Source of the DNA: Kudoa neothunni
Taxonomy: Eukaryota > Animalia > Cnidaria
Direction: 5' to 3'
Assembly: GCA_964304625.1 (NCBI GenBank)
Contig: OZ199840.1
Coordinates: 841,284-905,283, forward strand
Length of the DNA stretch: 64,000 nucleotides
The translations under genes and the position numbers were made by a program. Below, in pieces: positions 15,751 to 61,295 of the stretch (position 1 is the stretch's first letter; every line of letters starts with the position of its first letter). The notes beneath the pieces were generated by a model. The model did not search any database. It was not told where the DNA came from and saw only the letters and a list, made by a program, of their open reading frames with translations.

Positions 15751-18732
15751 CTAATTTCTGTTCCTCCAGTATCCAAAATAGAATCCTGCTCCAATAACAA
15801 CAAGAGCCATTGGAACTACAGTAGCAATAATTCTAAAAATCAAAATTAAACAAGACACTTCTACTTATTATACATTGTATTGGTTGATCTAAATAAATTT
15901 AAAACTAATATTTACATATTTACACATCGAAGTTACGTAGATTTGTTTGAGGTTTCACCTATTATTTAATTCAAAATTGTTATAAGTAATCTTATTTTAC
16001 CTTTATTAATTTTTTCACTTCCAAATACATTACTTTGGACACTATGGTATACTACCAACTGATAATTACTCGTGTCTTCAACATCGGAAATAACGAATTC
16101 CCTGCAAGGAGGAAACACATCGCAACCCTCACCAACTATCATGCATTTCTTAACTATTTGGTTGGATGGGTCGTCCAAATTTATTAATTTCCATTTACAC
16201 AAAGAATTTTGGTCTACATCATTCGGTAAAGTCGTTTTCACATTTATAGTTGTATCTTCACGGGTAATTACAATTGTTATTTTTTTCGTGGGGTTCACAT
16301 GTGGTGTAGCTGATGGATCTAAAATTAAATATTAATTATTGAATTTAAATATAATTTTTAATTATAGTTTTATTAATATTTAATTAAATTTTTGAGGTTA
16401 ATATATAATAAATTTTACTTTTGGGTATGTCTATTGTAGTTTCAGTAGATCTTCCAACAGCTGTCACTAAAACTCTGTACTCTTTGTCTGCTTCGTATCC
16501 TTCACTAAATATGATACTACTACATGAGGGTGGTACTTCACAAGATGGGATTGTAAGCTTATTAGTCGGCGTGACGTTTGTTGATGGTTGACCTGTAGAT
16601 CTAGCAACTCCAGATTGTGAGAGAGTTGATTTCATATCAGATTTTGCAGTATTTCCTGTCAATTGTGGTGCTGGACATTCATACAACATATCATACGTTT
16701 CGCCTTTCTTTACTTCTACTTTGTAGTGGCATACAGCATCGGCATAAGGTGAAGATAATGTGCCTACTACTTTAAAACCTTTTTCCAAAAATTGATTTTC
16801 TACTTTGAGAGTTGACATTTCTTAACAATCATAATTTAAAGTTAAATATACGATTAAGTTTTATACCTGTCCTTATTTGATAAACTTTGGAACCGTAATC
16901 TTTGTGTGCTACAACCTTGAGATCGTAATCTGTTCCCGGAGTCAATCCCATAATATTTTGAGTGTCTCTACAGAATCCTCTGCATGGATAACTATCCACA
17001 CACATTGCACAAACGTATACATCCTTTCCACGGGGGCTGAGATAGTAAGCACATGTAAAATCACTCTTGTCTACTTCTTTGTCAACTTCGAGAGCTTTAA
17101 TGGAAAGATGTGTATCCCCTATGGTTGTTGTTGCATCGGGGAAAACATTTTCGGCGGTTGCATCTGTATATTATATTATATAAATATCATTTGATTTTTA
17201 ATATACTTGTTCTGAAGAATATATGCTCTTTGAAATTAGCTGGAACACCAGTGATAGCTGTTGAAGCTGCTTTAATCACAAGAATATAAGGTTTTCCACT
17301 GACAAGCGTGGTTATCGCTAACGCTGAACCACAATCAGTGTTACATCCGCCACTGCCACCTCCACAGTTAGCACTTGTACCTTCCGCATCAGCCAAAGAT
17401 GGTTCATCGGCAGCATAATAACTTACAGTACACGAAGAAAATTGTGGGGTACCAGTTGGTTTGAATAAGCGTGTATCTAGTGTAACACCCGTGGCAAAGT
17501 ATGCCGATAGTAGTTTAGTGGGATTTCCCTCAGCATCTTTTTCATCAATAACTATATAAATCTTATTTGAAATATTTAACTTTCTTATAAACCAAATTTT
17601 TTTTGTATGTATCCAAAGTATGTAGTTCCACTTTTTTTTATTTGAAAATGTCTGGTCTGTATCAATATTTCGACAACTGCTTTTGACGTTTCAAAAGTAA
17701 GCTCCACATTATCACATGGTGCGTAGCAACCTTTATCTTCGCCTCCACCACAATTTGATTTATACTCACTTGAAGCACCATCTTCGATGGTAGTAGGTTC
17801 TTGTCTTATACCAAATCGGCAGATTTCAAATGGAAATTTATTAGTGAACTTAATCAAGTATTTATTTTTCTCGTTATGATTATACTTCACATAATATTGT
17901 GGTATGTAAACGTCAGTGTTCATCAAAGTATAAATATTTTGAAGTTTATAAAAGAATGATGGATAACCCACGCATTTCATTTCATAATGTGGGATCATCA
18001 AATCAAAATCTACTTCATTATTATTATCATTTCCTGTAACACAATCGGCTCCAGCGGTTCCGTCAGCGTATTTTACACCCTTATAGGAAATGGGGCATGC
18101 AACATTTGCACAAGTTATTGTTTTCAATTTCAGTTTACGTTGACTCGTTGATATTGTCACTTGTGGGTTTACTAGCAAACCTACAAAAAAATAAATAAAT
18201 GTAATTTCCACATTAATTACGTATGTCTAGTCCAAAAATTTTTGGGTTTGTATTTTTTTGAGAAGCAATTTCAGCCCCATTCGCCACAAAAACTTTGATA
18301 TATTTTGTCCTTGGGGAAAATTTATCATACGCAAGTGAATTAGTGCTTCCTGTGCAAACGATAACGCATTTATCATTGACTAGTACATTCCCATTTTCAG
18401 GACACTGATTAATATCTTGATAAGTAACCTCAACCTCGTTGAATTTTTTAATGTAACAATGGGTCGACTCGGAAAATTCACCTCCACTTAATGCAAAATG
18501 AACTTTCATATTGCTGTTATCTTTCAAAATCTTGTATGTGATGGATTCTTTTTCAGCTGGTTGAGGTTGTGGTTGTTGTAGCGGTTGCTGCTGTTGGGTC
18601 TGCTGAGATTGATTTGGTGATACATCTTCTAGTGTAGTTTTCGCTATATTATATTGAAATATTTTCTCAATAATAGAAATATTTACAAATAATAATAAAA
18701 ACTATGCCTAATAAACAGAGAAATCTTTTCAT
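15751..18732 (-). CDS. Cys-rich FN3-like repeat type I surface protein, array copy 1 (845 aa, 10 exons)
   Basis: Exons 18732-18687, 18643-18221, 18180-17593, 17551-17207, 17163-16867, 16820-16419, 16318-16001, 15958-15937, 15888-15874, 15832-15751, all GT-AG, sum 2538 nt in frame. Signal peptide MKRFLCLLGIVFIIIS; FN3-like GLTPGTDYDLKVVA; TM IIIATVVPMALVVIGAGFYFGYW; tail RNRN. Confidence 0.88.
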
Positions 18733-18835
18733 TTTGATTTAAATAATCAAACGGGGATATTAACGTTATATTCATAGAGAACATACAATGAATGTATTGA
18801 AATTTAATAATACTTTCGTACCTATTAATAATATA
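18733..18835 (-). promoter_or_regulatory. Conserved 5'UTR/proximal promoter block of the array genes (copy 1 instance)
   Basis: About 100 bp conserved upstream of all six ATGs, including + strand TTTTGATTTAAATAATCAAA and AATACTTTCGTACCTATTAAT. Confidence 0.5.
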
Positions 18836-18941: not shown

Positions 18942-20893
18942 CTAGCGCTAATACCCAACTTTGGCTGGTACTGTGTGATGGAAAATTTTAACTTTTAGTT
19001 TCTTTTCTGAATGGACAAATTCTACGGAAGATTTAATCTAATTGGCACGTTAAACCCTGTAAATTTTATTTCTCCATTTTTATTTATGAATTTTTTAACT
19101 TGACATTATTTTTTCAGTGTGGTGATTTATATACACCAAATTATGCACGCACTCTCCATTCAAATATAAAAAGATGCATTGAGAGAAATTAATGAGTATT
19201 TTTAAGTTTATTTTACAAATTATTGACCAAATCTATAATGAACTTGATTTTATGAGAAATTTAATAAACGATTAAAGTTCAATTATTTATTAAACAATAT
19301 CATCAAATAACTTAAATAGGACTTTCAGTTCTTTTCAAAATTTAGCGATATAAATTAATCCTTCTAGTTATAAAATTTATTATTAGTCTACAAATGATAA
19401 AAAAAATAAAATCAACCCATGAAGACTCCGAAATATAAATATTAATTGTTACTCTCTTTTCCGCAATTTTATAATGATGTCAATGATGTTTTAAAAAGCT
19501 GTGAGCGGTAACTTAAGTATTCATTATTGTAACAAAATTCCCCCATTTATAAAATAATCCAACCTTTCTTTTTATCAAAAATACTTACTGGTTCGAAAAT
19601 ATACACATTTAATTATCAAAATACGATAAAATCATAAATGTAAAGGTGTTTTTGGTTTGAAAAACTACAGTAATGCTTAAACATCAACTGGTTTTCTTGA
19701 AGGAATGCACCTCTTTAAAAATTAGCGTGCTGTTTGATTGTACTAAACTAATTTCTTCGTATTGAACTATTCTTAAATTAACGGAAACTTTGTGAAAATA
19801 TTGGTTAGATCGAATAGACCAATAATTTCTTGTTAACTTACATGGCATGTATTGAGAAGGGACTGTATTTTGTGTAAAAGTAGTCGTGAATATAAATTCT
19901 TAAATTACGTATGGAATGCGGCGTCGCATATTTTCATGAAACTTTATATCATAATGAATTAGTTTCAGCGAAAAGAAAATTATCAATTGATTTGGATATT
20001 AACATTAACATCTCGGGGTATGGAATAATTAGATTCCTAAGAACTTAAATATTGTTTAAATAATTATCTCATCAAATATAGTAACTTATCAAATTAGTTA
20101 TGCCAGCTGTTTTGCAAGAAAGTTGAGGAAAACTAAAAAATGAGTAAGAACATATCGAAAAGACTAATATAGCCTCAATCTAAATCGATATATTTGATAA
20201 AAAGAAATTTTCACATCTCAGTAATTTCAATGGAGCATAATTTACATTTAAGAAGTTATAACAAAAATTTAATTATTTGAAAATAGTACATACATCTTAC
20301 GTCGTTTTTAGAATGCGTATAGAGACCCAAATTATTCCAACATGGCAGAAACTTTAATCTCGAATTATGTGTTATATTTAAAATGATCATAATCCTTTTC
20401 GCTTAACTATATCCATAACGCTTGAAAAGTGAAAATAAATCCTAAATAATTTTGTTATGTTCCAAATTTTAAGGGAAATGCAACACCTCTTGTAAATGTA
20501 ACGTTAATAGGTTTATTTATCTTCAAATTGCTCCAAACGACATATATACCATTTTGAACACATTCTATATAATAATTAAAAGATTCTCTTTGTACATAAT
20601 GAGTGAAAGTTCATTTTAATTGGCAATCAATCAGAAGTAAACAAATATCAATATCATTCAGGTATTTTTAATCTGCTATTTGTAAAGACAACCAGAAAAT
20701 TCCTTACTTCGGAATGTGTTATTGACTATATTTATACTTATAAGTAAACTATCGATTTTTATTAGTGGTTTTATCTATTCAAATAAAAACTTACAGCTAT
20801 ATTTAAAGAAAGTTCCTCCATGGCACATGCATACTGTTGCAAACTGTCACACACACGGACACTACAACCTTCTATATTAGGATATAGAATAGA
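18942..20893 (-). mobile_element. Non-autonomous Helitron-like element, copy C (full length)
   Basis: Minus strand A|TCTATTCTATATCC..GTCCGTGTGTGTG at the 5' end; TACCAGCCAAAGTTGGGTA hairpin plus GCGCTAG|T at the 3' end. Inserted in an AT dinucleotide with no TSD. Confidence 0.8.
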
Positions 20894-20984: not shown

Positions 20985-23974
20985 CTAATTTCTGTTCCTC
21001 CAGTATCCAAAATAGAATCCTGCTCCAATAACAACAAGAGCCATTGGAACTACAGTAGCAATAATTCTAAAAATCAAAATTAAACAAGACACTTCTACTT
21101 ATTATACATTGTATTGGTTGATCTAAATAAATTTAAAACTAATATTTACATATTTACACATCGAAGTTACGTAGATTTGTTGGAGGTTTCACCTATTATT
21201 TAATTTAAAAATTGATATAAGTAATCTAATTTTACCTTTATTAATTTTTTCACTTCCAAATACATTACTTTGGACACTATGGTATACTTCCAACTGATAA
21301 TTACTCGTGTCTTCAACATCGGAAATAACGAATTCCCTGCAAGAAGGAAATACATCGCAACCCTCACCAACTACCATGCATTTCTTAACAATTTGGTTGA
21401 CGGGGTCGTCCAAATTTATTAATTTCCATTTACACAAAGAATTTTGGTCTACATCATTCGGTAAAGTCGTTTTCACATTTATAGTTGTATCTTCACGGGT
21501 AATAACAATTGTTATTTTTTTCGTGGGGTTCACATGTGGTGTAGCCGATGGATCTGAAATTAAATATTAATTATTGAATTTAAATATAATTTTTAATCAT
21601 AGTTTTATTAATATTTAATTAAATTTTTGAGGTTAATATATAATAAATTTTACTTTTGGGTATGTGTATTGTAGTTTCAGTAGATCTTCCAACGGCTGTC
21701 ACTAAAACTCTGTACTCTTTGTCTGCTTCGTATCCTTCACTAAATATGATACTACTACATGAGGGTGGTACTTCACAAGATGGGATTGTAAGCTTATTAA
21801 TCGGCGGCGTTACTTTTTTTGATGGTTGACCTGTTGATCTAGCAACTCCAGATTGCGAGAGAGTTGATTTCATATCAGATTCGGCAGTATTTCCTGCCGT
21901 TTGTGGTGCTGGGCATTCATACAACATATCATATGTTTCCCCATTCTTTACTTTTACTTTGTAGTGGCATACAGCATCGGCATAAGGTGAAGATAATGTG
22001 CCTACTACTTTAAAACCTTTTTCCAAAAATTGATTTTCTACTTTGAGAGTTGACATTTCTTAACAATCATAATTTAAAGTTAGGTGAAAAATGGGAAATT
22101 TAATACCTGTTCTTATTCGATGGACTTTGGATCCGTAATCTTTGTGTGCTACAACCTTGAGATCGTAATCTGTTCCGGGATTAAGTCCCACAATATTTTG
22201 AGTGTCTCTACAGAATCCTCTGCATGGATAACTATCCACACACATTGCACAAACATATACATCCTTCTCGCGGGGACTGATGTAGTAAGCACATGTGATA
22301 TCTGTATTCGCAGCATCTGTGTCAACTTCGAGAGCTTTAATGGAAAGATGGGTATCCCCTATGGTTGTTGTTGCACCGGGGAAAACATTTTCAGCGGTTG
22401 CATCTATATATTATATATTTATTATTGGATTTTTAAATTACTTGTTCTGAAGAATATATGCTCTTTAAAATTGTTTGGAACACCATTAGTAGCTGCGTTT
22501 GCAGGTGCTTTTATTACAATGATATATGGTTTTCCATTGTCAAGTGAGGATATTGTTAACGTTGAACCACACGTAGTGTCACATCCGCCACGTTCGGCTC
22601 CACAATTAGCCCCTGTACCTTCTCCACCATCCAAAGATGGTTTATCGGCAGCATAATAACTTACGGTACATGAGGAGAATTTTGTGGTATCAGATGGATT
22701 AAATAAGCTTGCATCTAGTGTAACACCTGTGGCAGTGTATGCCGATAATAATTCAGCATAAGTACCATCAACTTTTTTATCGTTAATAACTAAATACATA
22801 TTATTTGAAATACTTAACTTCAATAAAAACCAAATTTCTTTTGTTTATATCCAAAATACGTAGTGTCACTTTTTTCTATTTGAAAATGTCTGGTTTGTAT
22901 TAATATTTCAACAACTGCTTTTGACGCACCGAAGGTAAGTTCTACATTATTACATGGTGCATAGCAATCTTTATCTTCGTTTCCACCACATTTTGATGTA
23001 TAATCTTTTGTATCTCCAGTTTGAATTTGAGTGGATACGTCCTTTATCCCAAATCGACAGATTTCAAACGGAAATTTATTTGTAAACTTAAGTAAATATT
23101 TAGTCTTCAGGTCATCATTATTATATTTCACATAATATTGTGGTATGTAAACGTCGGTGTTCATCAATGTATAATTATTTTGAAGTTTATAATAGAATGG
23201 TGGATAACCCACGCATTTCATTTCATAATGAGGAATCATCAAATCAAATTCTACTTCATTATCATTTTCATTTCCTCTAACACAATCGGATCCAGCGGTT
23301 CCGTCAGCATATTTTACACCCTTATAGGAAATTGGGCATGCAACATTTGCACAAGTTATTGTTTTCAATTTCAGTTTACTTTCATTTGTTGATATTGTAA
23401 CTTGTGGGTTTACCAACAAACCTATAAACATATATTAGAAAATTAATATACGCATTAATTACGGATCTCTAGTCCAAAAATTGTTCCTCCTGTATTTTTA
23501 TTAGAAGCGGCGCCAGCTCCATTCCCAACAAATACTACAATATATTTTGCCCTTGGGGAGAATTTATCATACGTGAGTTTATTATCATTTTTAATGCAGA
23601 GGATAACGCACTTTCCACTGACTTGTTCACTGTCAGTTTGGGGACATGGGCTCATATCTTGATAGTTGTCGCCGGCATCGTTGGACTTCTTGATATAGCA
23701 ATGATTCGAAGCCGTAAACTCACCGCCACTCAATACTAAATGAACTTTCATATTGCTGTTATCCTTCACAATCTTGTATGTGAGAGATTCTTTTTCAGCT
23801 ATTCGAGTTTCAGGTTGTTGTTGTTGTTGTTGTTGTTGATTATTTTGGGGTTGAGTTTGTGATACATCTTGAAGAGAAGATTTTGCTATATTCGATTTAA
23901 ATATTTACCAATTAATAGAAATAATTACAAATAATTGTAATAATTATTCCTAATAAAAAGAGAAACCTATTCAT
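20985..23974 (-). CDS. Cys-rich FN3-like repeat surface protein, array copy 2 (appears intact)
   Basis: Same 10-exon layout; MNRFLFLLGIIITIIS signal peptide; (CAA)8 poly-Q linker; TM and RNRN tail. Confidence 0.87.
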
Positions 23975-32109: not shown

Positions 32110-35100
32110 TTTGATTTAAATAATCAAAAACGAAAATTAACGTTCTATTCATAAAGAACATTAAATAGAATCTATAAACTTTTTATAATACTTTCGTACC
32201 TATTAATACTACAATTCTGCTAAATTATTATCCTATAAATACGTTTCTTATAAACATTAAATAAATATCGTTGAACAAAAACTATTTACAACAAAAGAAT
32301 GTATCGATATTGTTACAAAACTTTACAATATTACTATTTAAAAACCCTTTAAAAAATTCAATTTCAATAATTTCTCTATCGTATTTTAAAAAATTCTTAA
32401 CATAGACTTTAACAATTTCTTTATAATTCAAGCGGATTATGAATTTAAATTTAATTTTTGTCTTTATGTTTCAACTCATCAACCCAGATTATAATGATTT
32501 TAATGTCTATTCATATTGTTTCAGAGACTTCATTACTTTCCCTAATTGATGTTGTTATCTTACTTTTTCTCATAATATTTATTTATAAATTTTTTACTTA
32601 TATTCCCTACGAAAATTCAAAATATAATTTTATTATTAAATTAGATAAAATATCTTCGCTATATCTCAAATTTATTTTTTAATTTTATTAAATACAATTT
32701 TTAATAACAACAAAAATTAATATAGATTTTAAAATTAATTTATAAAAATTTAACATTTGCAGAGCATTTTCAAATTATTGGATTAACCTCCTAAGTAAAT
32801 GAAAAATTTACACCTTCCAAATAAAAATGTGATATAAATTTACCTCATTTTTTTATCTTATAAAATTGTCCCAAATAAAATTATACATTGAGTAACAAAA
32901 TATGAGGAAAATTCATCGAGTAAAATTTGAATAAATGACCAATTATTAAAATTATATTCAATATGCGCCGCGCATGCATTAATGTAGTTACGTTTCATTG
33001 GAGAATGATTGTACGAAGTGGCTATTTGCATGGATCCATTTAATCCCCTCTCGGGATTGGCTCTATGTATGGATGGGAATATCTCCTAGAATATGTGAGA
33101 CGTTGAAAATTTGATATCATTTTTACAATAGGCCATATTTTTCCTACAAAATTTTTTAAAATATTTTTAATAATTTTAATTGTAGAATTCGTTCATTAAA
33201 GTCATACTTTAACCATCTTTCATGTGGCAACATCGTACTTATCTTGAGTTACTGACAGTATTTAAAGGTTATTTACGGTATTCAGTACAATTAATTCAAG
33301 TTATTTACCCAATCGTACGTTACGAACTCGATTACGGCGTGCGTACGAGACAATTTTTCACACTTAATTCCGATGGCTAATAATATTAGAAAAAAATGAG
33401 GTTGCCGAAATACCTCTTATATTTTTAATGGAACGTTCTTTTTACCGGTCGGTTGTTATTATCATTAATGCTTTAATTATATGCTCTCAAGGTTGAAAAT
33501 AATTTTATCGATTTCTTAAAATACTACTTTATTAAATTTATTGAGAGACAAATTTGTTAAATCAAAAATAAATCAAAATTTTATTTTCTACAAATTTAAT
33601 TCAATTCTTCTTGATAATTTTGTAGAGAGCCCAATAGCAGACGCTCTACTCATTTTCCTCCTCCTTATAATTTTTATTTTGGAGACTTCCTCCATAATAA
33701 TATTAGATCAGTTAAGTGCCAGGCGAGTATAATATCGCTGGAAAGTTTCGTTGTTACTTATATAATATCATATGACTGTTAATATGTGGTAACCATTACA
33801 CGTTTTCTTGCAATTCTGATGGATTTCAGGTAACAGAATAACGATATGAAGAATTATCACAGAGTTGATAATTTTTTAACAACGTTTTCGATCTTTCATT
33901 TGTCGATCCCAATCTATCGTTTCTGCAGTTTTTAAAATAATTTTCAGCATAACTTAGCAAACGATCTATTCACTAACGATTAGTTTCTATCATTTATCAA
34001 AATAAAAATCGAAATTGTAAAATTCGTACTCATATAATTATTCACATATGCGAACAACTTGATCGTTGCTAATACACAAACTGTTACATCTAAATTATTC
34101 ATAATATATCTCCATTTTTCTGAATTTATTCCATATTTTCCTATTTAATTTTCGCGTTTGAATATTTGACAGAAATGAAACTTACATATCAAAAGGGAGT
34201 AGATTCAAACGTCATCTTAAGGCACTTTCTGAGGCATTGTTATTTATCTGTTCTTATCTGCTCTTATTGTTCATATTTTTGTTTTTAGCCAAGGGGAAAC
34301 ATCGACTAATTATTTTAATAGCCATTTGATCGAATCTTCAGATTCATCATACGATACATGCACTTGTTATCAGTCATGCTAAACGAATCTTGTAATGTTG
34401 TTATGAATAAAGATGCGCTAGACATAAATATAGATGCATCTAGCATATTTAATTTAAATGAAACGTGAGTTAAATAGTACAGTTTTCAAAAAGGGTATTC
34501 GCGGAGATTCTCATTTTAAATTCACCGCATAGTTACAACTTAACCGAATGGTTTAGCTTATAAAATTATTTCGCATAAGGAAATCTATGAATTTTACGAT
34601 ACAACTTAGATCAAACGAGAATTAATGCTCAGTGCAAGACAATTACTAAAACAGTGAGATAACGCGAGGCCTGCGACCAATGCTCTGTGTGTGCAACATC
34701 TAGCATGACATTAATCAATTTTATTGCACGCAATACAACTTAATTCGTTAATATATTGTGTATAAGCATTTAATAATGTTATCGAATCAAGAAAAGTACG
34801 ATTTTGGTACATATGAGATGGTTAAAATATGGTTTTAATGGGAAAATTCTCCATTTAAAATTATTAAAAACAATTTATAAAATTTGATAGGAAAAATATA
34901 GCAAATTTGAAATTTGAAATCAAATTTTTAATATCTCACATATTCTAGGAGATATTCCCATCCATGCAATTAGCCATTTCCAATTTATTATGATTTGGTG
35001 TTATCTTGTCCATCTAGAGTAAAGAGCGCTGAGCGCCCTAGAGGGTCTCCATTCACAGTTGTTAGTATTTCTATAAAGAGAAAAATAATAAAAATTAATT

Positions 35101-35740: not shown

Positions 35741-38713
35741 CTAATTTCTGTTCCTCCAGTATCCAAAATAGAATCCTGCTCCAATAACAATAAGAGCTAC
35801 TGGAACTACAGTAGCAATAATTCTAAATATCTAAATTAAACAGGACATTGTTACTTATTATACATTGTATTGGTTGATCTAAATAAATTTAAAGTGAGCA
35901 CTTACATATAGAAGTTACGTAGATTTGTTTGAGGTTTCACCTATTCTTTAATTCAAAATTGTTATAAGTAATCTTATTTTACCTTTATTAATTTTTTCAC
36001 TTCCAAATACATTACTTTGGACACTATGGTATACTACCAACTGATAATTACTCGTGTCTTCAACATCGGAAATAACGAATTCCCTACAGGGAGGAAATAC
36101 ATCACAACCTTCACCGACTATCATGCATTTCTTAACTATTTGGTTGGATGGGTCGTCCAAATTTATTAATTTCCATTTACACAAAGAATTTTGGTCTACA
36201 TCATTCGGTAAAGTCGTTTTCACATTTATAGTTGTATCTTCACGGGTAATAACAATTGTTATTTTCTTTGTGGGGTCCACACGTGGTGTAGCTGATGGAT
36301 CTGAAATTAAATATAATTTTTAATTATAGTTTTATTAATATTTAATTAAATTTTTGAGGTTAATATATAATAAATTTTACTTTTGGGTATGTCTATTGTA
36401 GTTTCGGAAGATCTTCCAACAGCTGTCACTAAAACTCTGTACTCTTTGTCTGCTTCGTATCCTTCAGTAAATATGATACTACTACAGGAAGGTGGTCCTT
36501 CACAAGATGGGATTGTAAGTTTATTAGTTGGTATTACTTTTTTTGATGGTTGACCTCTAGATCTAGACACCATAGGTTGTGAGAGAGTTGATTTCATATC
36601 AGATTCGGCAGTATTTCCTGTCGATTGTGGTGCTGGACATTCATACAACATATCATACGTTTCGCCTTTCTTTACTTCTACTTTGTAGTGGCATACAGCT
36701 TCGGCATAAGGTGAAGACAACGTGCCTACTATTTTAAAACCTTTTTCCAAAAATAGATTTTCTAGTTTGAGAGTTGACATTTCTTATCAATCATAATTTA
36801 AAGTTAAATATACGATTAAGTTTTATACCTGTCCTTATTTGAAAGACTTTAGAACCGTGCTCTTTGTGCGTGACAACCTTTAGATCGTATTCTGTTCCGG
36901 GAGTAAGTCCCACAATATTTTGAGTGTCTCTACAGAATCCTCTGCATGGATAACTATCCACACACATTGCACACACGTATACATTCTTTCCGCGGGGGCT
37001 GAGGTAGTAAGCACATGTGATATCTGTATTCGCAGCAACTGTGTTAACTTCGAGAGCTTTAATGGAAAGATGGGTATCCTTTATAGTTGTCTTTGCATCG
37101 GAGAATACATTTCCGGCGGTTGCATCTATATATTATGTTATATATAGACATTATTCTATTTTCAATAAACTCGTTCTGAAGAATATATGTTCTTTAAAAT
37201 TGGCTGGAACAAGATTGTTAGCTGTTGCAGCTGATTTAATTACAAGGATATAAGGTTTTCCACTGGCAAGTTGGGATACTGTTAATGTTGAAGTACACTG
37301 AGTGTCACAGTTGGTACCACCATTTCCACATTTCGCTTCTGTACCATCCACATTTTTCAAAGAGGGTTTATCAGCAGCATAATAACCTACAGTACATGAA
37401 GAGAATTTCGGGGAATCGGTCGGATTAAATAAGCTTGCATCCAGCGTCACACCTGTAGCTGTGTATGCCGATAGTAGTTTAGCATAAGTGTCACCTTCCT
37501 TTTTATCATTAATAACTAAATACATATTATTTGAAATACTTAACTTCAATGAAAACCAAATTTTTTTTGTATGTATCCAAAGTATGTAGTTTCACTTTTT
37601 TTTATTTGAAAATGTCTGGTTTGTATTAATATTTCGACAACTGCTTTGGACGTTTCAAAAGTAAGTTCCACATTATCACATGGTGCGTAGCAATCTTTAT
37701 CTTTACCACCACAATTTGATTTATACTCACTAGTAGCACCAGCTTGAATTGGAGTGGCTTCATCCTTTATACCAAATCGGCAGATTTCATAAGGAAATTT
37801 ATTAGTGAACTTAAGTAAGTATTTATTTTTCTCGCCATGATTATACTTCACATAATATTGTGGTATGTAAACATCGGTGTTCATCAATGTATAATTATTT
37901 TGAAGTTTATAAAAGAAGCTTGGATATCCCACGCATTTCATTTCATAATGTGGAATCATCAAATCAAATTCTACCTCACTTTCATTTCCTGAGACACAAT
38001 CGTTTCCAGTGATTCCCTCAGCGTATTGTACTCCCTTATAGAAAATTGGGCATGCAACTTTGTGACAAGTTATTGTGCTAAATTTCAGTTTACTTTGAAT
38101 TGTTGATATTTTTACTTGTGGATTTACCAACAAGCCTATAAAAATATATACAGGAAGACTAATATGCTTATTAATTACGAATCTCTAACCCAAAAATTGT
38201 TCCTCCTGTAGTTTTTCTAGAAGCAGCGTCAGCCCCATCCCCAAAAAACACTCCAATATATTTTGTTCTTGGGGATAATTTATCATAGGTGATTTTATTA
38301 TCATTTTTTGTACAGGTAATGACGCACTTACCATTGACAAGTGCGCTGCCAGTTCCGGGGCACTGATTAATATCTTGATAAGTAACCCCATCGTCATTGG
38401 ATTTTTGAATATAGCAATGATTCGAGTCGATAAAGTCACCGCCGCTCAATATTAAATGAACCTTCATATTGCTCTCATCTTCCACAATTTTATATGAAAG
38501 GGATTTTGGCGCAGCCGGCGGAGGTTGAAGTTGTTGTTGAGTTTGAGTTTGAGCTTGAGTATGAGGTATAGGTTGTGTCTCAGTTTGAATCGCAGGCACT
38601 AATGCATCTTGTAAAGTTGTTGTCACTATAATTGATTGAAAGATGCATTCAGTAATAGAAATGTTACAAATAAGTGTAAAAATTATTCCTAATAAAAAGA
38701 CAAACCCTTTCAT
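35741..38713 (-). CDS. Cys-rich FN3-like repeat surface protein, array copy 4 (appears intact)
   Basis: MKGFVFLLGIIFTLI signal peptide. Intron 1 is 42 nt and stop-free, so the ORF track reads through it. Same exons, TM and RNRN tail. Confidence 0.87.
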
Positions 38714-39143
38714 TTTGAATTAAATTATCAAAAAGGGATATTAACGTTATATTTATAAAGAACAATAAAATGAATGTATTGAAATTTAATAATACTTTCG
38801 TAGGTATTAATAGTATAATTTTACTAACTTATTAGCTTACGAAAGCGTTTCTTATTAACGTCGAATAAATGTCGCTGACAAATAATAATTACTAAAAATA
38901 AAAAATGCATCGTTATTATTTCAAAACATAAATTAAACATAGCATTAATTTGAAACCAACATCCGATTTAAATTTTGTATAAAAATAAGAACCTTATAAA
39001 AATATTTAATAAATAATTTTATTTTCAAAAATTCCTCGAAAGTAATTCATTATAAATGCCTCAAATATAATTTTGATGTTTTCCCTGTAATTTAAATGAT
39101 TATAACATTCAATTCAATTAAAATACCAATTACATTCGTTTTA

Positions 39144-40962: not shown

Positions 40963-41263
40963 TATTAATTTTTATACACAATTCAAACATAATTATTGAT
41001 TTTTAAGTCAAATATATTTATATATTTATATTATTTCATCAACTTCATAATTTTTTGTATCTTATGTTGCATTCATACTTTTTAATCATCAAATATAATT
41101 AAACATTTATGTATATATTTCCTTAAATACTTCCAAGATTACTCTGTTCGATTTTTGGGGGATAAATCTACATAATTTCGCTTTATTTTAATCTCTTTAC
41201 ACACAATAATATCATTGTTTTTCTCATGACTCTACCACAATAAAATTATTTTAATGAAATATT

Positions 41264-43619: not shown

Positions 43620-44099
43620 GAAATATTCATAACCCCCCTACTCAAAAATGGGGTTATTTTCACGATCAGTGTATTTAATCTATGTTTTTCTGTGATCACA
43701 TCAAAATGAATCAAGAAAAGTTTATCTAAAATTTATTTTTAAAACTACTTTATTTTAATAAATAATTAAAATTTGTAATATGTTATTTTATATCCACTTT
43801 ATTTCTCGTAACATTGAAAATCACTATCCCCATGTGGAAACCATTTCAACTCCCATTTTTTTTTAAACTATAAATAGTATTTAAGTCATTTACATCATGT
43901 GATAAAAAAGAATCTTGAATTATAATAAAGACTATTATTGCTAAAATATACTTAAAAAATATGGATAAAATATTTTTTATTCAAATAATTTATTTCAATT
44001 GTGAATCACTTAAAATATGCTTCTTTAGAAAGAGAAGAATTTATGAATACTTATTTTAAATAATATTATAATCAGACGTGGTTTACAAATATTTTAAAA

Positions 44100-48191: not shown

Positions 48192-49168
48192 TTTGATTTA
48201 AATAATCAAAAACGATAATTAACGTTCTATTCATGAAGAACATTAAATAGAATCTATGAACACTTAATAATACTTTCGTACCTATTAATACTATAATTCT
48301 GCAAAATTATTACCCTATGAATACGTTTATTATTAAGTTTAAATAAATATCGTTTATCAAAAACTATTAACAACAAAAATGTATTGATATTATTACAAAA
48401 CTTAAAAATCTTATGAATTAAAAAAGTTGTAAATGTATTTAACTTTAAATTAATTAAAATCCTTATCAAAAAATAAACAAATAATTTTAATTTTAATAAT
48501 TTCTATATCGTATTTAAAAAAATTCTTAACATAGACTTAAATAGCTTCTTTATAATTAAACAGATTATTTATTACAATTTTAATGGTAATCTGGAAGTAT
48601 GTGACAGTAAAATTTAAGGTGGTTGCGCATGCTTTAGATACCCGATTTATATACAGTTTAATTTTATACATTTTTCAAATATTGAGTGGGAAAGAAATTA
48701 CCCTAAAAATTATTAAACAAAAAATCAATATTTTACGAATCGTGAACAATCGTTGGCGGCGAAATCATTATCGGTGTTTGTCGTTTCAGTTTATTATTGA
48801 CTTTATAAGCGTTAGAACAACTCTATTCTTACATAATAATTTTTCGTTTTTAGTTTGAAATTTAATGAAACAATCATTACAGTTTCATATAATTTCTCGA
48901 TTAATATTTTTGAGATTCAAAAATTTACTCTAAAATCCCCCAAATCGTCGCTCTGATTGTCATCGCTACAATACAATGGTCATATGTAAGAGGAAAAGGC
49001 GAAAGGTGAATATGAGTTCATCAACATTAAGGAATGGAGATGAAGATATTCATTTATCATATAGATGCAAAAAGTATACAAAATATAAGTCTCGCATTAA
49101 ATATTCTTAGAAATGATTGCAAAACCTAATTTTCCGCAAGAAACTCTACATTTTTTGGATTAAAAGGA

Positions 49169-50014: not shown

Positions 50015-50209
50015 TTATTCCAATGGATTTTAACTTCGTTTTAAATTTTTCTCCCCGTATAAATGCAATTAAATTCAATTTTATACGATAGTATTATTTA
50101 TAAGTTTTTTCGATAAGTATTCAAAGATAAAATGATAATAATTATGAAACAAGTTCTATATTTCGCATATGAATAAATGTCATATTTAGTATATGACATT
50201 TAAAATAGT

Positions 50210-51834
50210 GGTAATGGTAAAGGAAACGGCTACTAAATTTTAACCGCTAAACTTCATTTCTTTTCACCGAGTTTTTCACAATAATTTTTTTTACAATTTT
50301 ACATGCTAGTCAAAATCGTTCAATTCTCTAAAATTTAATCATAAATTTTAATAAATCTCCGGATTAATCTCCCAGTTGTGTTATTTAAGTCTGTATTATA
50401 TTAGGATTTGAATCGTTATTTTCCCTATTTGTATCATGTATACTTCATAGTTATGCACTTTTTATTGTCCGTAATGAATCAGATATTTTTACCCAATGAT
50501 CAGGTGGAATAATTCGCATTAATAGTAGTTAGATTCACAATTCGATGTTGTAAAACTAAGGTAATTCCTCGAACTGGAACTTTTTTCGAGTTGGGATTTG
50601 TTTCATCATCCCCAAAACATAACGGTGAAGAAGATATGTATGATTATTTACAACTGGAGCATGGATGAAACTATTCTATGCGCCTTCGAAAATACTAATG
50701 TAACCACAAGAACATCGGGCTATTGTTAAAAAATTAGGAATATTCGTGCGTTTAATGTTCATAAGCGTAAACCTTTTGATGGTAAAAAGCATTTAATTGA
50801 AAATGAAAAAATAATCCTCACGGAATGCTGAAAAATTGTTGGGCCGTTGGCCGATACCTTAAATGAAATTTTTTGAAAACTATGGCGTGCCAATTATTTA
50901 TCATTTTATCAAATTATATGTCGCAGTAACTGCCTCATTAGAATAATTTTTATAACAATTTATCGTGAGTAAAGAATTAATGTTAAGTTATAATATAATG
51001 TTAAACTAACTGGTAAATAATAAAATATTATAGAAATAGAGAAAACTCACAATTATCTGGAAATTTTAACAGCAGATTTAAAATAAAACAATTAGTTTTA
51101 AAAATGTAAGAAAAGATTTAACATAAAACTTTGAGACCATATGTATCCAAAAAAACCTTGTGACACATGTAATATATGTTGTGACAATATATTATTAAAT
51201 TCAGATTCATATTACTCATTTTATTTTGTGTAAATAGTTTTTTAAAAAAATGATTTTTCAAAAATTAATTGTTACAATATTTTTTTTTAGAATTATTATA
51301 TATAATGAAGTTTGACGATTGCTTATATTGTCACTATAAAATTTCATCATAAAATTTTGATGATATAACGATCATAGCTTTTTTTATAACTCAGATAAAT
51401 TAACTAAAAAAATACATAAACTAAGATAAACGATAATTGATCGTATTGTCATTTGGAATGATTCAAAGTCAATGTACAAAAAAAATAGACTAGATAATTT
51501 GAAGTAAGATGTCTAAAGCTTAATTAAACGACTGAGTCGTATAATTTTGGAATGATGCATTACTATAAATCTAATTAAGACATATAATAAATTTAGAAGT
51601 TAGTGTATACAAAATAAGGTGGTTTTTCATTGGTCATTGGAAATTTAACAAAGATTTTACGTGTGCCGATAACATTCTTTTCGGAATTTTGTACCAAAAT
51701 TAGATGTTACCATAACTGGCCGAATACCATCTCTCTGCATTATTTTATTTTGATATGAAAAATCGTGAAAGAATGGGCGAAAATAAATGAAATTCAGCGG
51801 TTGAAATTTAGTAGCCGTTTCCTGTAACATTACC
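50210..51834. mobile_element. Nested non-autonomous Merlin element, same family as 41264-43619
   Basis: Ends GGTAATGGTAAAGGAAACGGCTAC and GTAGCCGTTTCCTGTAACATTACC; first ~310 bp match the 41264 TIR; degenerate 8-bp TSD. Confidence 0.75.
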
Positions 51835-53388
51835 AAATTTGTTTTCTCCTAATAGTAACTTTTTATCTGAAAATTATTGATCTATTATTGAATTTTAAAT
51901 GATAGCTAATATATAAACGGAGATAACCAATTTAGTAATAATTAGTAATCCTGCATTTTCAATCAAAAATCTAGAATTGGGTTTCTTAATACAATGAATT
52001 TTAAGTAATTATCATAGCACAAATTTGAAGAATTTAAATTATATTAGATGATAATCACAAAAATTATTTAATTCGTTTAACTCTCTTTACGACATACAGA
52101 ATTCCAAATCTTTTATAAAAACGTAAAGCATGACCTTTTACTTCTATAAAATTTTAGAATTTTTTAAGTTCCTTGTGTATATAGTTTTTTTTATCCTCAT
52201 TATAAAATTTTAACGTTTTAAAAAGCTTTTACGCGGATTCCACATAATCATTTATTTTTTTTCTCTCATTGTGGTGCAGTTACTATTTAAAATAAATATA
52301 CTAAAAAAATGTGATTTATTCAAATTCATACTTTATAATTAATTAAGAATTTTTTTAAAATTATCTTGATATAATTTCCTTTTTTAATTCCATATGGATA
52401 ATTATTTATCATCTAGAGTAAACCTTACTCTAGATGATTCGTAGTATAATATTATTATATTAATGGTGAAAGTTCAATTATGCTAACTATTACGCTTGAT
52501 CGAACAAAAACATTCCGGTTATCCTGAGCTAATTATCCGATTTATAAAATTTAAATAAAATCGTGGTTTTAGTGAAAATAAATGATATTTTATTGATTCA
52601 AACCTAATATATCGAATTTTACGTCGGAGGGTTAAATTTCTTACGTGAATATATACATATATGAAAACATTTTCGCCATATGTGTACAGATGAGCACGCA
52701 TGCAAACATGAGAAGACAAACATGGTGTTCTGTATTTATATGTATGATAATATATGAGCTTTTATGTTAAATAAATGAATTTGTTGACGATTCCATAGCA
52801 TCGAATTGAACATTAACAATATAGCCGAGTAGGCAAGAATAGTATTAGTATGTATAATAATGCCAACGATTGTTCACGATTCGTAAAATGTCTATTTTTT
52901 TTGTTTAATAATTTTTAGGGTAATTTCTTTACCACTCAATATTTGAAAAATGTATAAAATTAAACTGTATATAAATCGGGTATCTAGAGCATGCGCAACC
53001 ACGTTAAATTTTACTGTCACATACTCCCAGATTACCCAATGTAATTATTGTCTTCATGTTTCAACCCATCAACCCAGATTATAATGATTTTTATGTCTAT
53101 TCATAATATTTCAACGATTCCATTACTTTCCCCAATTGATGTTGTTATCTTCCTTATTGTCATAATAATTAATTATAAATTTTATACAAATATTCCCTAT
53201 AAAAATTCAAAATAAATTTTTAATTATTAAATTAGATAAACTATGTTCGTTAAATTTCAAATTTATTTTTTAATTTTGCTAAATACAATTTTTAATAACA
53301 ACAAAAATTAATATAGATTTTCAAATTAATTTTAAAAACTTTAATATTTTCAGGGCATTATCAAATCGTTGGATTAACTTACTAAATA

Positions 53389-55415
53389 CAGTCGAGATTG
53401 GATATTGCGTGGGTTTCTGGGACCAACAAAAACCCACGCAATAACAAATTTTTACGCAATATCCAGACCTTTGCGTGCGCAGTGTACTATAAAATATGAT
53501 TTTTTCGTGTTTACGTCCGATGCCAATTAGTGAAAATCAAATTTTTATATATAAATATATTATTTAATTAAATGAAATGTGATTTATCAAATTTTGTCGA
53601 AAAAGCTTGTAATTTTAGTTTGTCGGAATCTTTCTCTTGATATTTTTAAAACTCGGTCCATTATGGGATGTAAATCAAACAATCCCCTCGGATCCTCTTT
53701 AATAAAAGCTTCCCTCAGAACGTTCACTGCATTTTTCATTTGATTAATTGAAACTTTGATGTCTTCAATGATTGATTCGCTATCGTCAGATTCGTCACTT
53801 ATGGGCAATAAGTCCTCATTATTTTCTTCCTCGCATGTTGCTTCATAATCGTCATCAAACATATTTTCTGAATCTTCGATTTCATCTAGAAAAAATTAAT
53901 TACGTATACGTTAAATATTACCTTGAGAACAGTTGCTGATTTGAGGTATCTCACTCACATCTTCTTGGTCTATAAACTGATAATAACTTTATTGTCGTAA
54001 TTTTATTTAATACCTCCAAATATTTTTGATTTTTTAAAGCAATTAATAATAATTTGCGGCGGAATACTTTCCCAACATTTAGTTAATGTTATCATTGAGT
54101 CAAGCAATGTATATTTTTTTATGATAGAATCTTCGCATAAAACCATTCGCTCGGTCATTGAACTTTTGTACCTGCTTTTAAGGCAGCGAATGATGCCTAA
54201 ATCAAAGGGTTGTAAAATACTAGTTGTATTTTTAGGTAAGAACAAAAATTTGATATTTTCAAAGCAATCAATATTTTTTGGATGGCCTGGACATTGGTCC
54301 AACAAAATTAAGACTTTTCTATTCTGATTTATCATCCTTCGGTTAAACTTTTTCATTATTTCGATAAATATACTAGAAATCATCCATGCACTTTTTTGTG
54401 CATAATATTCACATGGGAGGTGTTTGACTCTTTTAAAACATCTAGGATTTTGAAATTTCCCGATAACAACTAATGGGAACTTATCCCCATTTAAAGCTGA
54501 GGACAGTAAAACAGTCACCCTTTTTTTGGATAATTTTTTCCCCTTAATCCCGACTTCCTCCTTTAAAACGTAACTACTATTTTGTAACTGCTCATAATAA
54601 AGAGCAGTTTCGTCGATGTTAATAACGTCTTTTGGATTATATGCTCTAATCAAATCAATGTTCTCAATAATCCATGAGTCGACAGATGCAACATCTGCAC
54701 TCGCAGCCTCGCCATGGAACTTTTTGAAAACTATCCCATATCTTGACTTGAACCCTGCAAGCCATCCCTTGCTGGCTTTAAAATTGGAAACTTTGTTTTC
54801 ATTTGCAATATAAGAAGCTTTTTTGATAATGGCATCTCCTGACAGAACGTTACCATTCGACCGTTGTTTAACAAACCAATCATACACTTCATCGTCTATA
54901 TTTTTGAATCTGCCTGCCGAATGTCTCTTCCTTTTACTTTCAATATCTGTATTTTTGAATTTATCTTCGTGCGAAAGAATTCTATCAAGTGTTGAATGAC
55001 CTTAAATGTGATTTTACAATAGTATTCAATAGAAGACTACAATACCACTCAATTTAAACTTGGAAATTGTCATTGATATCGCACCCTTCAACGTTTTTAT
55101 TGAATTGTAGTAATGGATGATTTCCATTTTCTCTGAAATATTGCGTTGTTCACGGGACATAATGAAAAAACACTATCTGAATTAAACCAATTGACCACAA
55201 AAAACCACTCAATAACGAGTCACGCTGCGCCTAACAACCACGCAATAACGAGACTTTTTGTATTAATAAATTTTTTTAAATTTTTTGTTAACAAATATTT
55301 TTACATTACAATAAGATAATAACAATTTGAAAAAACTATGTTTCTCTCTTTAAAGGATAACTTTGAAAATCTCTAATTACGCAATATCCAGTCACGCAAT
55401 ATCCAATCTCGACTG
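53389..55415 (-). mobile_element. pogo/Tigger transposon, apparently intact
   Basis: Perfect 23-bp TIR CAGTCGAGATTGGATATTGCGTG, TA TSD, subterminal ACGCAATA repeats. Empty site at ~32795. Confidence 0.93.
53587..55160 (-). CDS. pogo/Tigger transposase, 4 exons
   Basis: ATG 55160 MSREQRNISEKMEII; CENP-B HTH; INIDET, ILLDQC and LPKNTTSILQPFD catalytic motifs; acidic tail and terminal PIP box QTKITSFF. Three short phase-1 introns restore a single frame. Confidence 0.85.
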
Positions 55416-58309: not shown

Positions 58310-61295
58310 CTAATTTCTATTCTTCCAGTAACCAAAATAGAATCCTGCTCCAATAACAACAAGAGCTATTGGAACTACAGTAGCAATAATTCTAAATATC
58401 AAAGTTAAACAAAACATATCTACTTATTATACATTGTATTGGTTGATCTAAACAAATTTAAAACTAATATTTACACATCGAAGTTACGTAGATTTGTTGG
58501 AGGTTTCACCTATTATTTAATTTAAAAATTGATATAAGTAATCTTATTTTACCTTTATTAATTTTTTCAAGCCCAAATACATTACTTTGGACACTATGGT
58601 ATACTACCAACTGATAATTACTCGTGTCTTCAACATCGGAAATAACGAATTCCCTACAGGGAGGAAATACATCACAACCTTCACCGACTATCATGCATTT
58701 CTTAACTATTTGGTTGGATGGGTCGTCCAAATTTATTAATTTCCATTTACACAAAGAATTTTGGTCTACATCATTCGGTAAAGTCGTTTTCACATTTATA
58801 GTTGTATCTTCACGGGTAATTACAATTGTTATTTTCTTTGTGGGGTTCACATGTGGTGTAGCTGATGGATCTGAAATTAAATATTCATTATTGAATTAAA
58901 ATATAATTTTTAATTATAGTTTTATTAATATTTAATTAAATTTTTGAGGTTAATATATAATAAATTTTACTTTTGGGTATGTCTATTGTAGTTTCGGAAG
59001 ATCTTCCAACAGCTGTCACTAAAACTCTGTACTCTTTGTCTGCTTCGTATCCTTCAGTAAATATGATACTACTACAGGAAGGTGGTCCTTCACAAGATGG
59101 GATTGTAAGTTTATTAGTTGGTATTACTTTTTTTGATGGTTGACCTCTAGATCTAGACACCATAGGTTGTGAGAGAGTTGATTTCATATCAGATTCGGCA
59201 GTATTTCCTGTCGATTGTGGTGCTGGGCATTCATACAACATATCATATGTTTCCCCATTCTTTACTTTTACTTTGTAGTGGCATACAGCTTCGGCATAAG
59301 GTGAAGATAATGTGCCTACTACTTTAAAACCTTTTTCCAAAAATTGATTTTCTAATTTGAGAGTTGACATTTCTTAACAATTATAATTTAAAGTTAAATC
59401 AAAAATGGGAAATTTAGTACTCGTCCTTATTTGATGGACTTTAGAACCGTGCTCTTTGTGCGCAACAACCTTGAGATCGTAATCTGTTCCAGGAGCCAAT
59501 CCCACAATATTTTGAGTGTCTCTACAGAATCCTCTGCATGGATAACTATCCACACACATTGCACACACGTATACATTCTTTCCGCGGGGGCTGAGGTAGT
59601 AAGCACATGTTATATCTGATATGCCAACCGCCGTGTTAACTTCGAGAGCTTTAATGGAAAGATGGGTATCCCCTATAGTTGTTATTGCATCGGGGAAAAC
59701 ATTTTCAGTGGTTTCATCTATATATTATGTTATATATAGACATTATTCTATTTTCAATAAACTTGTTCTGAAGAATATATGTTCTTTAAAATTGGCTGGA
59801 ACAAGATTGTTAGCTGTTGCAGCTGATTTAATTACAAGGATATAAGGTTTTCCACTGGCAAGTTGGGATACTGTTAATGTTGAAGTACACTGAGTGTTAC
59901 AGTCGTCAGCCCCTGTTCCACATTTAGCCCCTGTACCTTCCCCACCAACCAAAGAAGGTTTATCGGCAGCATAATAACTTACAGTACACGAAGAAAATTG
60001 TGGGGTAGTAGATGGTTTGAATAAGCGTGTATCTAATGTAACACCTGAGGCAGTGTACGACGATAATAATTCGGCGGGAGTTTCATCAGTAAGTTTTTCT
60101 GTAATAACTAAATAAATATTATTTGAAATATTTAACTTTCTTATAAACCAAATTTTTTTTGTATGTATCCAAAGTATGTAGTTCCACTTTTTTTTATTTG
60201 AAAATGTCTAGATTGTATCAGTATTTCGACAATTGCTATTGACCTTTCGAACGTAAGCTCCACATTATCACATGGTGCGTAACATTCTTTATGTTCGCCC
60301 CCACCACAATTTGATATGTAATCATTAGTATTTCCAGCTACAACTGTAGAAGATTCGTCTTTTATACCAAATCGACAGATTTCAAATGGAAATTTATTAG
60401 TAAACTTAAGTAGATATTTAGTTTTATTTTCATCATATTTCACATAATATTGTGGTATGTAAACGGCGGTATTCATCAAAGTATAATTATTTTGCAGTTT
60501 ATAAAAGAATGATGGATAACCCACGCATTTCATTTCATAATGTGGGATCATCAAATCAAAATCTACTTCATTATTATTATCATTTCCTGTAACACAATCG
60601 GCTCCAGCGGTTCCGTCAGCGTATTTTACACCCTTATAGGAAATGGGGCATGCAACTTTTGGACAAGTTTTTGTTTTCAATTTCAGTTTGCTTCCATTTG
60701 TTGATATTGTAACTTGTGGGTTTACCAACAAACCTATAAATATATAGATGTGTAATATACACATTAACTACGTATGGCTAGACCAAAAATAGTTCCGCCT
60801 TTAATTTGTTGAGAAGCAGTTTGGGCTCCCACCGCCACAAAAACTCCAATATATTTTGTTCTTGGGGAAAATTTATCATACGTGAGTTTATTATCATTTG
60901 TATTACAGAGGACAACGCACTTTCCATTGACTTGTTCACCGCCAGTTTCGTGACATGGATTCATATCTAGATAGTTGTCCCCAGCGTCGTTGGACTTCTT
61001 GATATAGCAGTGGTTCGACTGAATAAATCTACCCCCACTCAATACTAAATGAACTTTCATATTGTCGCCATCCTTCACAATCTTATATGTAAGGGATTCT
61101 GGTTCAGCTGGCTGAGCTTGACCTTGGATTTTTGGTTGTGGTTGTGGTTGTTGTTCCTGTTGCTGCTGAGGTGGAGTGGGTGCTGTATCTTGGAGATTAG
61201 TTTTCGCTACATTAGATCGGTTTATTTGTTTGCTAGTAAAAATAGTTACCAATAACTGAAAAAATAATTCCTAATAAATAGAGAAATCCCTTCAT
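58310..61295 (-). CDS. Cys-rich FN3-like repeat surface protein, array copy 6 (appears intact)
   Basis: MKGFLYLLGIIFSVIA signal peptide; Q/P linker; same exon set; TM and WKNRN tail. Confidence 0.87.

What the first reader, a model, noticed from the sequence alone, without database searches (positions are those of the whole stretch)
15751..61295. Six-gene tandem array of an unrecognised variant surface-protein family (candidate antigenic-variation or receptor-diversity locus)
Seen: six same-strand ~3-kb genes with identical 10-exon architecture, encoding a signal peptide, Q/P linker, ~7 Cys-rich domains, TM and a 4-aa tail. The ORF track breaks each into 5-8 unrelated-looking ORFs, so automated annotation would easily miss it. 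Divergence is graded: exons 2-4 (membrane-distal) differ extensively, while exon 7, the micro-exons and TM/tail are almost invariant. Established: a variable Cys-rich ectodomain on a conserved TM with a tiny tail is the design of parasite variant coats such as Giardia VSP. Inference: a host-exposed coat or adhesin family under diversifying selection, or alternatively an allorecognition/immune receptor cluster.
Basis: partly seen in the sequence, partly recalled or inferred. Interest (0 to 1): 0.92.

Follow-up and report, generated by a model that had tools for sequence, protein, structure and literature searches.

The report
Myxozoan fibronectin-like variable surface protein family
These six genes belong to a family of at least 218 related cell-surface proteins, for which I found no description, in a fish parasite that descends from jellyfish-like animals; the genes swap segments with one another and may form a changeable outer coat or a set of host-binding proteins.

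Summary
The six 10-exon genes are real. They are part of a 10-copy array and of a genome-wide family of at least 218 loci in a 40.2-Mb myxozoan genome that matches Kudoa neothunni (5,316 annotated genes). Each encodes an ~845-aa type I membrane protein: signal peptide, Gln/Pro linker, seven four-cysteine domains, TM and 4-aa tail. The three domains I modelled are fibronectin-III/Ig-like sandwiches; two more have weak Fn3 hits. They are not Giardia-type VSPs (3.5% Cys, one CxxC). Copies 3 and 5 each carry four one-base homopolymer frameshifts, probably read errors; no read check was possible. The divergence gradient also shows in synonymous sites and introns and vanishes family-wide, so it reflects segmental gene conversion. 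Whole-exon dN/dS is 0.19-0.54; variable loops evolve near neutrally, with a few positively selected sites in domains 1 and 4. A CG-N8-CG element sits about 34 nt before the ATG in 27 of 30 dispersed copies. No named homologue or paper was found; unnamed relatives occur in five other samples. The scan's first readers noted this family in other windows, several as Fn3-like. A host-facing variable coat or adhesin repertoire is likeliest; antigenic switching is untested.

The parts
15751..18732 (-). Copy g1, 10 exons, 845 aa, intact
18687..18732 (-). g1 exon 1: signal-peptide-like hydrophobic N-terminus (46 nt, same length in all copies)
   Evidence: by inspection
18221..18643 (-). g1 exon 2: Gln/Pro linker plus domain 1 (Fn3-like sandwich, 4 Cys). 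Most divergent part; candidate selected sites in the loops after strands B and F
   Evidence: model pLDDT 83; top structural matches are cytokine-receptor Fn3 domains, Z 6.7, rmsd 2.9, 85 aligned
17593..18180 (-). g1 exon 3: domains 2 and 3, two tandem Ig/Fn3-like sandwiches; with exon 5 the most conserved part family-wide
   Evidence: model pLDDT 87; Z 7.7 for residues 1-79, Z 6.8 for residues 84-195
17207..17551 (-). g1 exon 4: domain 4 with a hypervariable loop between invariant Cys; best signal of positive selection
   Evidence: Pfam fn3 in 18 of 48 members, below cut-off; M8 vs M8a P 0.0002
16867..17163 (-). g1 exon 5: domain 5, clearest Fn3 sequence signature
   Evidence: Pfam fn3 in 38 of 46 members, best E 8e-5, below cut-off; profile hits titin and fibronectin Fn3
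16419..16820 (-). g1 exon 6: domain 6 (4 Cys); fold inferred, not modelled
   Evidence: HHalign to domain 1 E 3.5e-4; cross-hits
16001..16318 (-). g1 exon 7: domain 7 (4 Cys); fold inferred, not modelled
   Evidence: HHalign to domain 6 E 4e-3; cross-hits
15751..15958 (-). g1 exons 8-10: two micro-exons (22 and 15 nt, Ser/Thr stalk), then TM with a GxxxG motif and a 4-aa basic tail
20985..23974 (-). Copy g2, intact, 848 aa
29090..32109 (-). Copy g3; four one-base homopolymer frameshifts (near 31590, 31400, 30907, 30042), no nonsense codon, splice sites intact; probably read errors
35741..38713 (-). Copy g4, intact, 850 aa
45208..48191 (-). Copy g5; four one-base homopolymer frameshifts (near 47105, 46957, 46529, 46122), no nonsense codon; probably read errors
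58310..61295 (-). Copy g6, intact, 848 aa
23996..24007 (-). Upstream CG-N8-CG element of g2, about 33 nt before the ATG
32131..32142 (-). Upstream CG-N8-CG element of g3
48213..48224 (-). Upstream CG-N8-CG element of g5
61317..61328 (-). Upstream CG-N8-CG element of g6
18754..18765 (-). Degenerate upstream element of g1 (second CG altered; likewise g4 at 38735-38746)

Best explanation
A large lineage-specific family of type I surface glycoproteins of a Kudoa myxozoan that forms a host-facing variable coat. Shown: gene structure, at least 218 loci, Fn3/Ig-like models for domains 1-3, a scaffold under strong purifying selection (dN/dS 0.08 at conserved sites), tolerant loops (0.84), segment exchange between copies, and a shared upstream element. 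Inferred: each protein is a rod of seven disulfide-stapled sandwiches on a short stalk with no signalling tail of its own. Duplication and segmental gene conversion shuffle loop cassettes and homogenise the membrane-proximal half within a cluster. The shared element puts the family under one regulator, so subsets are expressed by stage or cell. Loop diversity then blunts fish antibody or cell recognition while keeping a generic coat or attachment role. Whether expression is mutually exclusive is unknown.
For: Parasite identity: contigs of 17.15, 12.04 and 11.05 Mb plus a small COX1 contig against 40.2 Mb, N50 12.0 Mb, three chromosomes (PMC12239612). Family size at least 218 loci in about 100 clusters, 308-438 loose candidates, against 5,316 annotated genes. 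Most copies are open: 6 of 35 dispersed loci show one frame split and none a stop in the matched exons. Mosaicism: PHI P<=0.002, identical tracts of about 120-450 nt, also in exons 3-4. Site models: exon 4 within the array omega 3.2 at 6% of sites, P 0.0002; exon 2 across dispersed loci P 0.003-0.004. Upstream element in 27 of 30 (shuffle mean 0.3, max 3); 22 of 25 genome-wide exact-pattern sites lie just upstream of a listed family gene, 12 of them outside the training set (against 14, 98). Stage-changing antigens are reported for Kudoa thyrsites with mechanism unknown (PMC8481699).
Against: Whole-exon dN/dS is below 1 everywhere, and variable sites in exons 2-4 average 0.84 (CI 0.67-1.06), which relaxed constraint explains equally well. 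Site tests are my own implementation on fixed trees, and recombination inflates them. Structural Z-scores are below 8, and Pfam fn3 hits are below cut-off. A shared promoter element fits co-expression as well as switching. Kudoa spends its sporogonic phase inside muscle cells, partly hidden from antibody.
Confidence: 0.45

Rival explanations
1. A repertoire of adhesins or host-receptor-binding proteins: copies are co-expressed and differ in ligand (tissue, fish species, annelid host), using Fn3 loops the way cytokine receptors and monobodies do.
For: Fn3/Ig rods are an animal adhesion scaffold (established knowledge). The flagged sites in domain 1 fall in the loops after strands B and F, which lie at one pole of an Fn3 domain (inference from topology). 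Scaffold conservation is strong, and one shared upstream element fits co-expression.
Against: At least 218 copies with frequent loop shuffling is far more than the number of plausible ligands. Variable patches lie along the whole rod, not only at the tip. The tail is too short for a cytoskeletal link.
Confidence: 0.25
2. Self or cell-cell recognition among parasite cells (homophilic binding), working like the Hydractinia Alr proteins, in cell-within-cell development or mating.
For: Cnidarian precedent: Alr proteins are clustered single-pass proteins with divergent Ig domains and a disulfide-bearing Fn3-like domain (PMC9546547).
Against: Alr genes sit in one complex and several carry ITAM/ITIM tails; this family is spread over three chromosomes with 4-5 aa tails. 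Alr Fn3-like domains lack the EF-loop Leu and strand-F Tyr, which domains 4 and 5 here keep. No named sequence was hit.
Confidence: 0.12
3. Largely non-adaptive expansion: a structural surface protein amplified in transposon-rich DNA, with loops drifting under relaxed constraint and concerted evolution inside clusters.
For: Copies are interleaved with Tc1, pogo and ISXO2-type remnants. Variable-site dN/dS is not above 1. The gradient is present at silent sites.
Against: Hundreds of mostly open copies with dS above 1 between them, a kept promoter element and the same domain order in other organisms are hard to explain by drift in a genome that has lost most of its genes.
Confidence: 0.1
4. Structural coat of the spore valve or polar filament, or decoys for host cytokines.
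For: Disulfide-rich rods suit a tough coat. The top structural matches of domains 1-3 include interferon and interleukin receptor Fn3 domains and a poxvirus IFN-gamma-binding protein.
Against: These matches are 6-18% identical with Z below 8, tied with many unrelated Fn3 domains, so they show a shared fold only. A structural coat needs little loop variety.
Confidence: 0.08

Closest known systems
Giardia/diplomonad variant-specific surface proteins (VSP, PF03302) and the 18 VSP-like genes of the myxozoan Sphaerospora molnari (10.64898/2026.02.11.705288)
   Same: Signal peptide, large ectodomain, single TM, very short conserved basic tail, multigene family in a parasite.
   Different: 3.5% Cys against more than 10%; one CxxC against more than five CXC/CXXC; Fn3/Ig-like sandwiches; at least 218 copies; tail does not fit the S. 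molnari motif; no PF03302 hit.
Fibronectin type III tandem arrays (fibronectin, titin, Dscam/contactin, cytokine receptors)
   Same: Seven-strand sandwich models for domains 1-3; EF-loop/strand-F signature in domains 4 and 5; symmetric phase-1 exons of about one domain.
   Different: Identity 2-18% in structural matches, Pfam hits below cut-off, four Cys with a hypervariable insert per domain, no cytoplasmic domain, hundreds of paralogs.
Hydractinia Alr allorecognition proteins (PMC9546547)
   Same: Cnidarian clustered family of single-pass proteins with divergent Ig-like and disulfide-bearing Fn3-like domains.
   Different: Alr has up to three V/I-set domains plus one Fn3-like domain, one genomic complex and signalling tails in several; no sequence link found, and Alr sequences were not on hand for a direct test.
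Parasite variant-antigen families diversified by segmental gene conversion (trypanosome VSG, Pneumocystis MSG, Babesia VESA; own knowledge, titles seen)
   Same: Large repertoire, conserved membrane-proximal part within clusters, mosaic copies.
   Different: Animal parasite and animal fold; clusters along all chromosomes, not mainly subtelomeric; each copy has its own upstream element; no expression site or switching shown.

Membership tests
VSP (diplomonad / S. molnari definition) | More than 10% cysteine | tested here: not met
   3.4-3.6%
VSP (diplomonad / S. molnari definition) | More than five CXC or CXXC motifs | tested here: not met
   one CxxC, no CxC
VSP (diplomonad / S. molnari definition) | Signal peptide, one TM, short conserved tail | tested here: met
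   (signal peptide by inspection)
VSP (diplomonad / S. molnari definition) | Match to Pfam VSP PF03302 | tested here: not met
   no hit for any exon or alignment member; the genome-wide search was blank but had no positive control
VSP / antigenic variation systems | One gene expressed at a time, with switching | not testable with these tools
Fibronectin type III domain | Seven-strand sandwich with Fn3/Ig-like topology | tested here: met
   domains 1 and 3 best match Fn3 (Z 6.7, 6.8), domain 2 an Ig-like domain (Z 7.7); Z below 8, so fold only; domains 4-7 not modelled
Fibronectin type III domain | Pfam PF00041 above the gathering score | tested here: inconclusive
   weak hits in 38 of 46 (exon 5) and 18 of 48 (exon 4) members, best E 8e-5; scores seen for window copies 15-16 bits against a cut-off of 25; none for exons 3, 6, 7
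Hydractinia Alr | N-terminal V-set/I-set Ig domains followed by one Fn3-like domain | tested here: not met
   domain 1 best matches Fn3; seven domains in all
Hydractinia Alr | Cytoplasmic tail with room for ITAM/ITIM; one genomic complex | tested here: not met
   4-5 aa tails; about 100 clusters on three chromosomes
Hydractinia Alr | Direct sequence or profile homology to Alr | not testable with these tools
   no Alr sequence was returned by any tool; database searches gave no named hit
Variant surface multigene family (works-like test) | Large repertoire with mosaic copies | tested here: met
   at least 218 loci; PHI P<=0.002 and conversion tracts
Variant surface multigene family (works-like test) | Positive selection on exposed variable regions | tested here: inconclusive
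   significant for a few sites in exons 2 and 4 only; recombination not modelled; variable-site mean 0.84

The most novel reading that the evidence does not exclude
True antigenic variation in an animal parasite: Kudoa switches among several hundred Fn3-scaffold coat genes, each driven by a shared CG-N8-CG element, and refreshes the repertoire by segmental gene conversion. This would supply the missing molecular basis for the stage-changing antigens and persistence of myxozoans.
Probability: 0.22. Interest if true: 0.92.

Novelty: new variant of a known kind. Interest (0 to 1): 0.72.

Why it matters
Myxozoans cause losses in fisheries and aquaculture, have no vaccine or treatment, and are known to change their antigens by an unknown mechanism (PMC8481699). 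A genome that has lost about two thirds of its ancestral genes yet keeps at least 218 copies of one surface protein (4% or more of the annotated gene count) points to a central host-interface function. The genome paper does not mention the family, and its annotation ran on repeat-masked sequence with homology hints only, so the family may have been missed; I could not inspect the annotation. The gene models, the conserved domains 2-3 and 5, and the shared upstream element make antigenic variation in an animal parasite directly testable.

Tried and rejected
I then left copy g3 out of all search queries; the second degenerate promoter pattern was widened to cover the window's copies and also matches the g3 site. 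Exons were joined only inside scripts, for counts and recombination statistics, with X at each frame break. Two-exon alignments A2 and A3 misaligned and were dropped. ESM Atlas searches gave nothing usable. Named homologues: none; the one named hit, a shark TFIIIB repeat region at E 1e-5, was rejected as spurious. The organisms behind the foreign contigs could not be identified. An RNA-hairpin reading of the upstream element is weak: outer pairs are often broken and only two of 30 show a change on both sides. A cytokine-decoy reading was set aside as fold-only. Mis-assembled alleles and VSP membership were rejected.
Full report
Observation. Self-comparison of the window shows six minus-strand units of about 3.2 kb, 82-87% identical. 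I built the gene model by hand for g1 and projected it onto the rest. All six have 10 exons and GT..AG introns of 38-55 nt, with intron 6 at 80-100 nt. g1, g2, g4 and g6 give open frames of 845-850 aa: hydrophobic N-terminus, Gln/Pro linker, seven domains of about four Cys, Ser/Thr stalk, TM and a 4-aa basic tail. The domain exons are phase 1 at both ends. g3 and g5 each have four private one-base insertions in homopolymer runs, with no nonsense codon and intact splice sites. Three neighbouring copies beyond the window show the same kind of break. One-base homopolymer indels alone are the signature of long-read error, and the likely source assembly had k-mer cover near seven.

Organism. The assembly has 40,260,978 bases in contigs of 17.15, 12.04 and 11.05 Mb plus a small contig carrying COX1. 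The 18S fragment looked myxozoan to me from memory. Weber et al. 2025 (PMC12239612) report Kudoa neothunni from yellowfin tuna at 40.2 Mb, N50 12.0 Mb, three chromosomes, a circular mitochondrion and 5,316 genes predicted on repeat-masked DNA without transcript evidence. The identification rests on this match, not on a label. The paper has no occurrence of 'surface', and searches found no description of this family.

Family. Their union is at least 218 distinct loci in about 100 clusters on all three chromosomes; this array has 10 copies. Thirty-five dispersed loci keep the same exon order, 6 show one frame split and none a stop in the matched exons. They end in a TM and a 4-5 aa basic tail. 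Outside this genome, exon 3 found 13 credible relatives among 1.8 billion representatives at 29-56% identity; the nine looked up are unnamed. The ten traced come from five samples, several with more than one paralog, and longer contigs keep the domain order. Their organisms are unidentified; one record name suggests a codfish gut data set, which I could not confirm.

Fold. The domain 1 model (pLDDT 83) best matches Fn3 domains of cytokine receptors (Z 6.7, rmsd 2.9, 85 aligned). The exon 3 model (pLDDT 87) holds two sandwiches, one Ig-like (Z 7.7) and one Fn3-like (Z 6.8). Exons 4 and 5 give weak Pfam fn3 hits in 18 of 48 and 38 of 46 members and hit titin and fibronectin Fn3 repeats. Profile comparisons link domains 4-5 (E 2e-5), 1-6, 1-4 and 6-7, against a best reversed control of E 0.013. 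Domains 6 and 7 are assigned by inference only. All Z-scores are below 8, so they show a fold and no function. The VSP criteria fail: 3.5% Cys and one CxxC.

Evolution. Among the six copies dN/dS is 0.36, 0.32, 0.28, 0.54, 0.40, 0.39 and 0.19 for domains 1-7. dS falls from 0.64 to 0.12-0.15, and intron divergence from 0.30 (intron 1) to 0.03-0.11 (introns 6-9), so the gradient is in gene history and not just in protein. Among dispersed loci dS is a flat 1.1-1.4 and there is no gradient. The copies are mosaics: PHI P<=0.002, with identical tracts such as g3/g5 246 nt in exon 3, g4/g6 119 nt in exon 4 and g2/g5 419 nt in exons 6-7; the nearest partner changes along each gene. With site classes defined on outside loci only, variable sites in exons 2-4 give dN/dS 0.84 (0.67-1.06) and conserved sites 0.08. 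My own codon site models flag a small class above 1 in exon 4 within the array (omega 3.2, 6% of sites, P 0.0002, mostly in the Cys-bounded loop) and in exon 2 across 20 dispersed loci (P 0.003-0.004); the other exons show little. Recombination inflates such tests, so this is suggestive only.

Upstream element. Twenty-seven of 30 dispersed copies carry CG-N8-CG with the first CG 32-37 nt before the ATG; other spacings give 0-1 and shuffles at most 3. An exact consensus pattern hit 25 sites in the genome (control 3 matches), 22 of them just upstream of a listed family gene and 12 outside the training set. A looser pattern gave 115 matches against 54 for the control. It is intact in g2, g3, g5 and g6 and altered in g1 and g4. 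A site for a dimeric DNA-binding factor is the simplest reading; no function is shown.

How it most likely works. The gene structure, family size, fold of domains 1-3, purifying selection on the scaffold, loop tolerance, conversion and shared element are shown. The rest is inferred: a rod-like surface protein without its own signalling tail, whose loop cassettes are reshuffled among hundreds of copies under one regulator, serving as a variable host-facing coat (0.45). Rivals are an adhesin repertoire (0.25), parasite self-recognition like Hydractinia Alr (0.12), largely neutral expansion (0.10) and a structural or decoy role (0.08). Stage-changing antigens are reported in Kudoa thyrsites with no known genes behind them, which makes the best reading plausible but does not test it.

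Verdict. It works like a parasite variant-surface multigene family but is not a member of VSP or Alr. I found no description of the family, and its build, an Fn3-like scaffold in an animal parasite, is unusual: a new variant of a known kind, interest 0.72. The joined spliced protein was not searched or folded, and no read or expression evidence could be obtained.

Noticed in passing
window 105-977 (+): C-terminal part of another orphan type I membrane protein (helical stalk, TM, short tail); no Pfam family.
   Followed up: no
window about 9290-10280 (-): Spliced thioredoxin-like gene (CxxC, PF00085 E 4e-10), probably a TMX-type membrane thioredoxin.
   Followed up: partly
window 26787-28076, 39513-40497, 54003-54887, 48585-53036, 41259-43624: DNA transposon remnants between the array copies: Tc1-type with 49-nt inverted ends, two pogo/Tc5 DDE_1 pieces, an ISXO2-like transposase inside 140-nt inverted ends, and a non-coding element with long inverted ends.
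   Followed up: partly
window 1396-3105, 11408-12849, 19024-20856: Three copies of a ~1.7-kb repeat without a long ORF (78-85% identical), probably a non-autonomous element.
   Followed up: no
L031 (G000:C2:5424779-5428248): 3' part of an 18S rRNA gene with ITS1 and a 5.8S-like stretch, whose upstream 18S part is replaced by AT-rich DNA with a zinc-finger-like reading frame; possibly an rDNA-inserting retroelement.
   Followed up: no
L046, L051, L052, L057, L061, L065, L072 last exon: A subfamily has a different TM and ends in a dilysine-like tail directly after the TM; possibly an ER-retrieval motif, more likely plain stop-transfer charges.
   Followed up: no
G000:C2:7957073 and several sites: The CG-N8-CG element occurs in inverted orientation before some family genes, which favours a DNA-level palindromic site over an RNA signal.
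   Followed up: partly
L035:67-1068: In a foreign relative the domain 1 and exon 3 parts form one open frame with no intron between them.
   Followed up: partly
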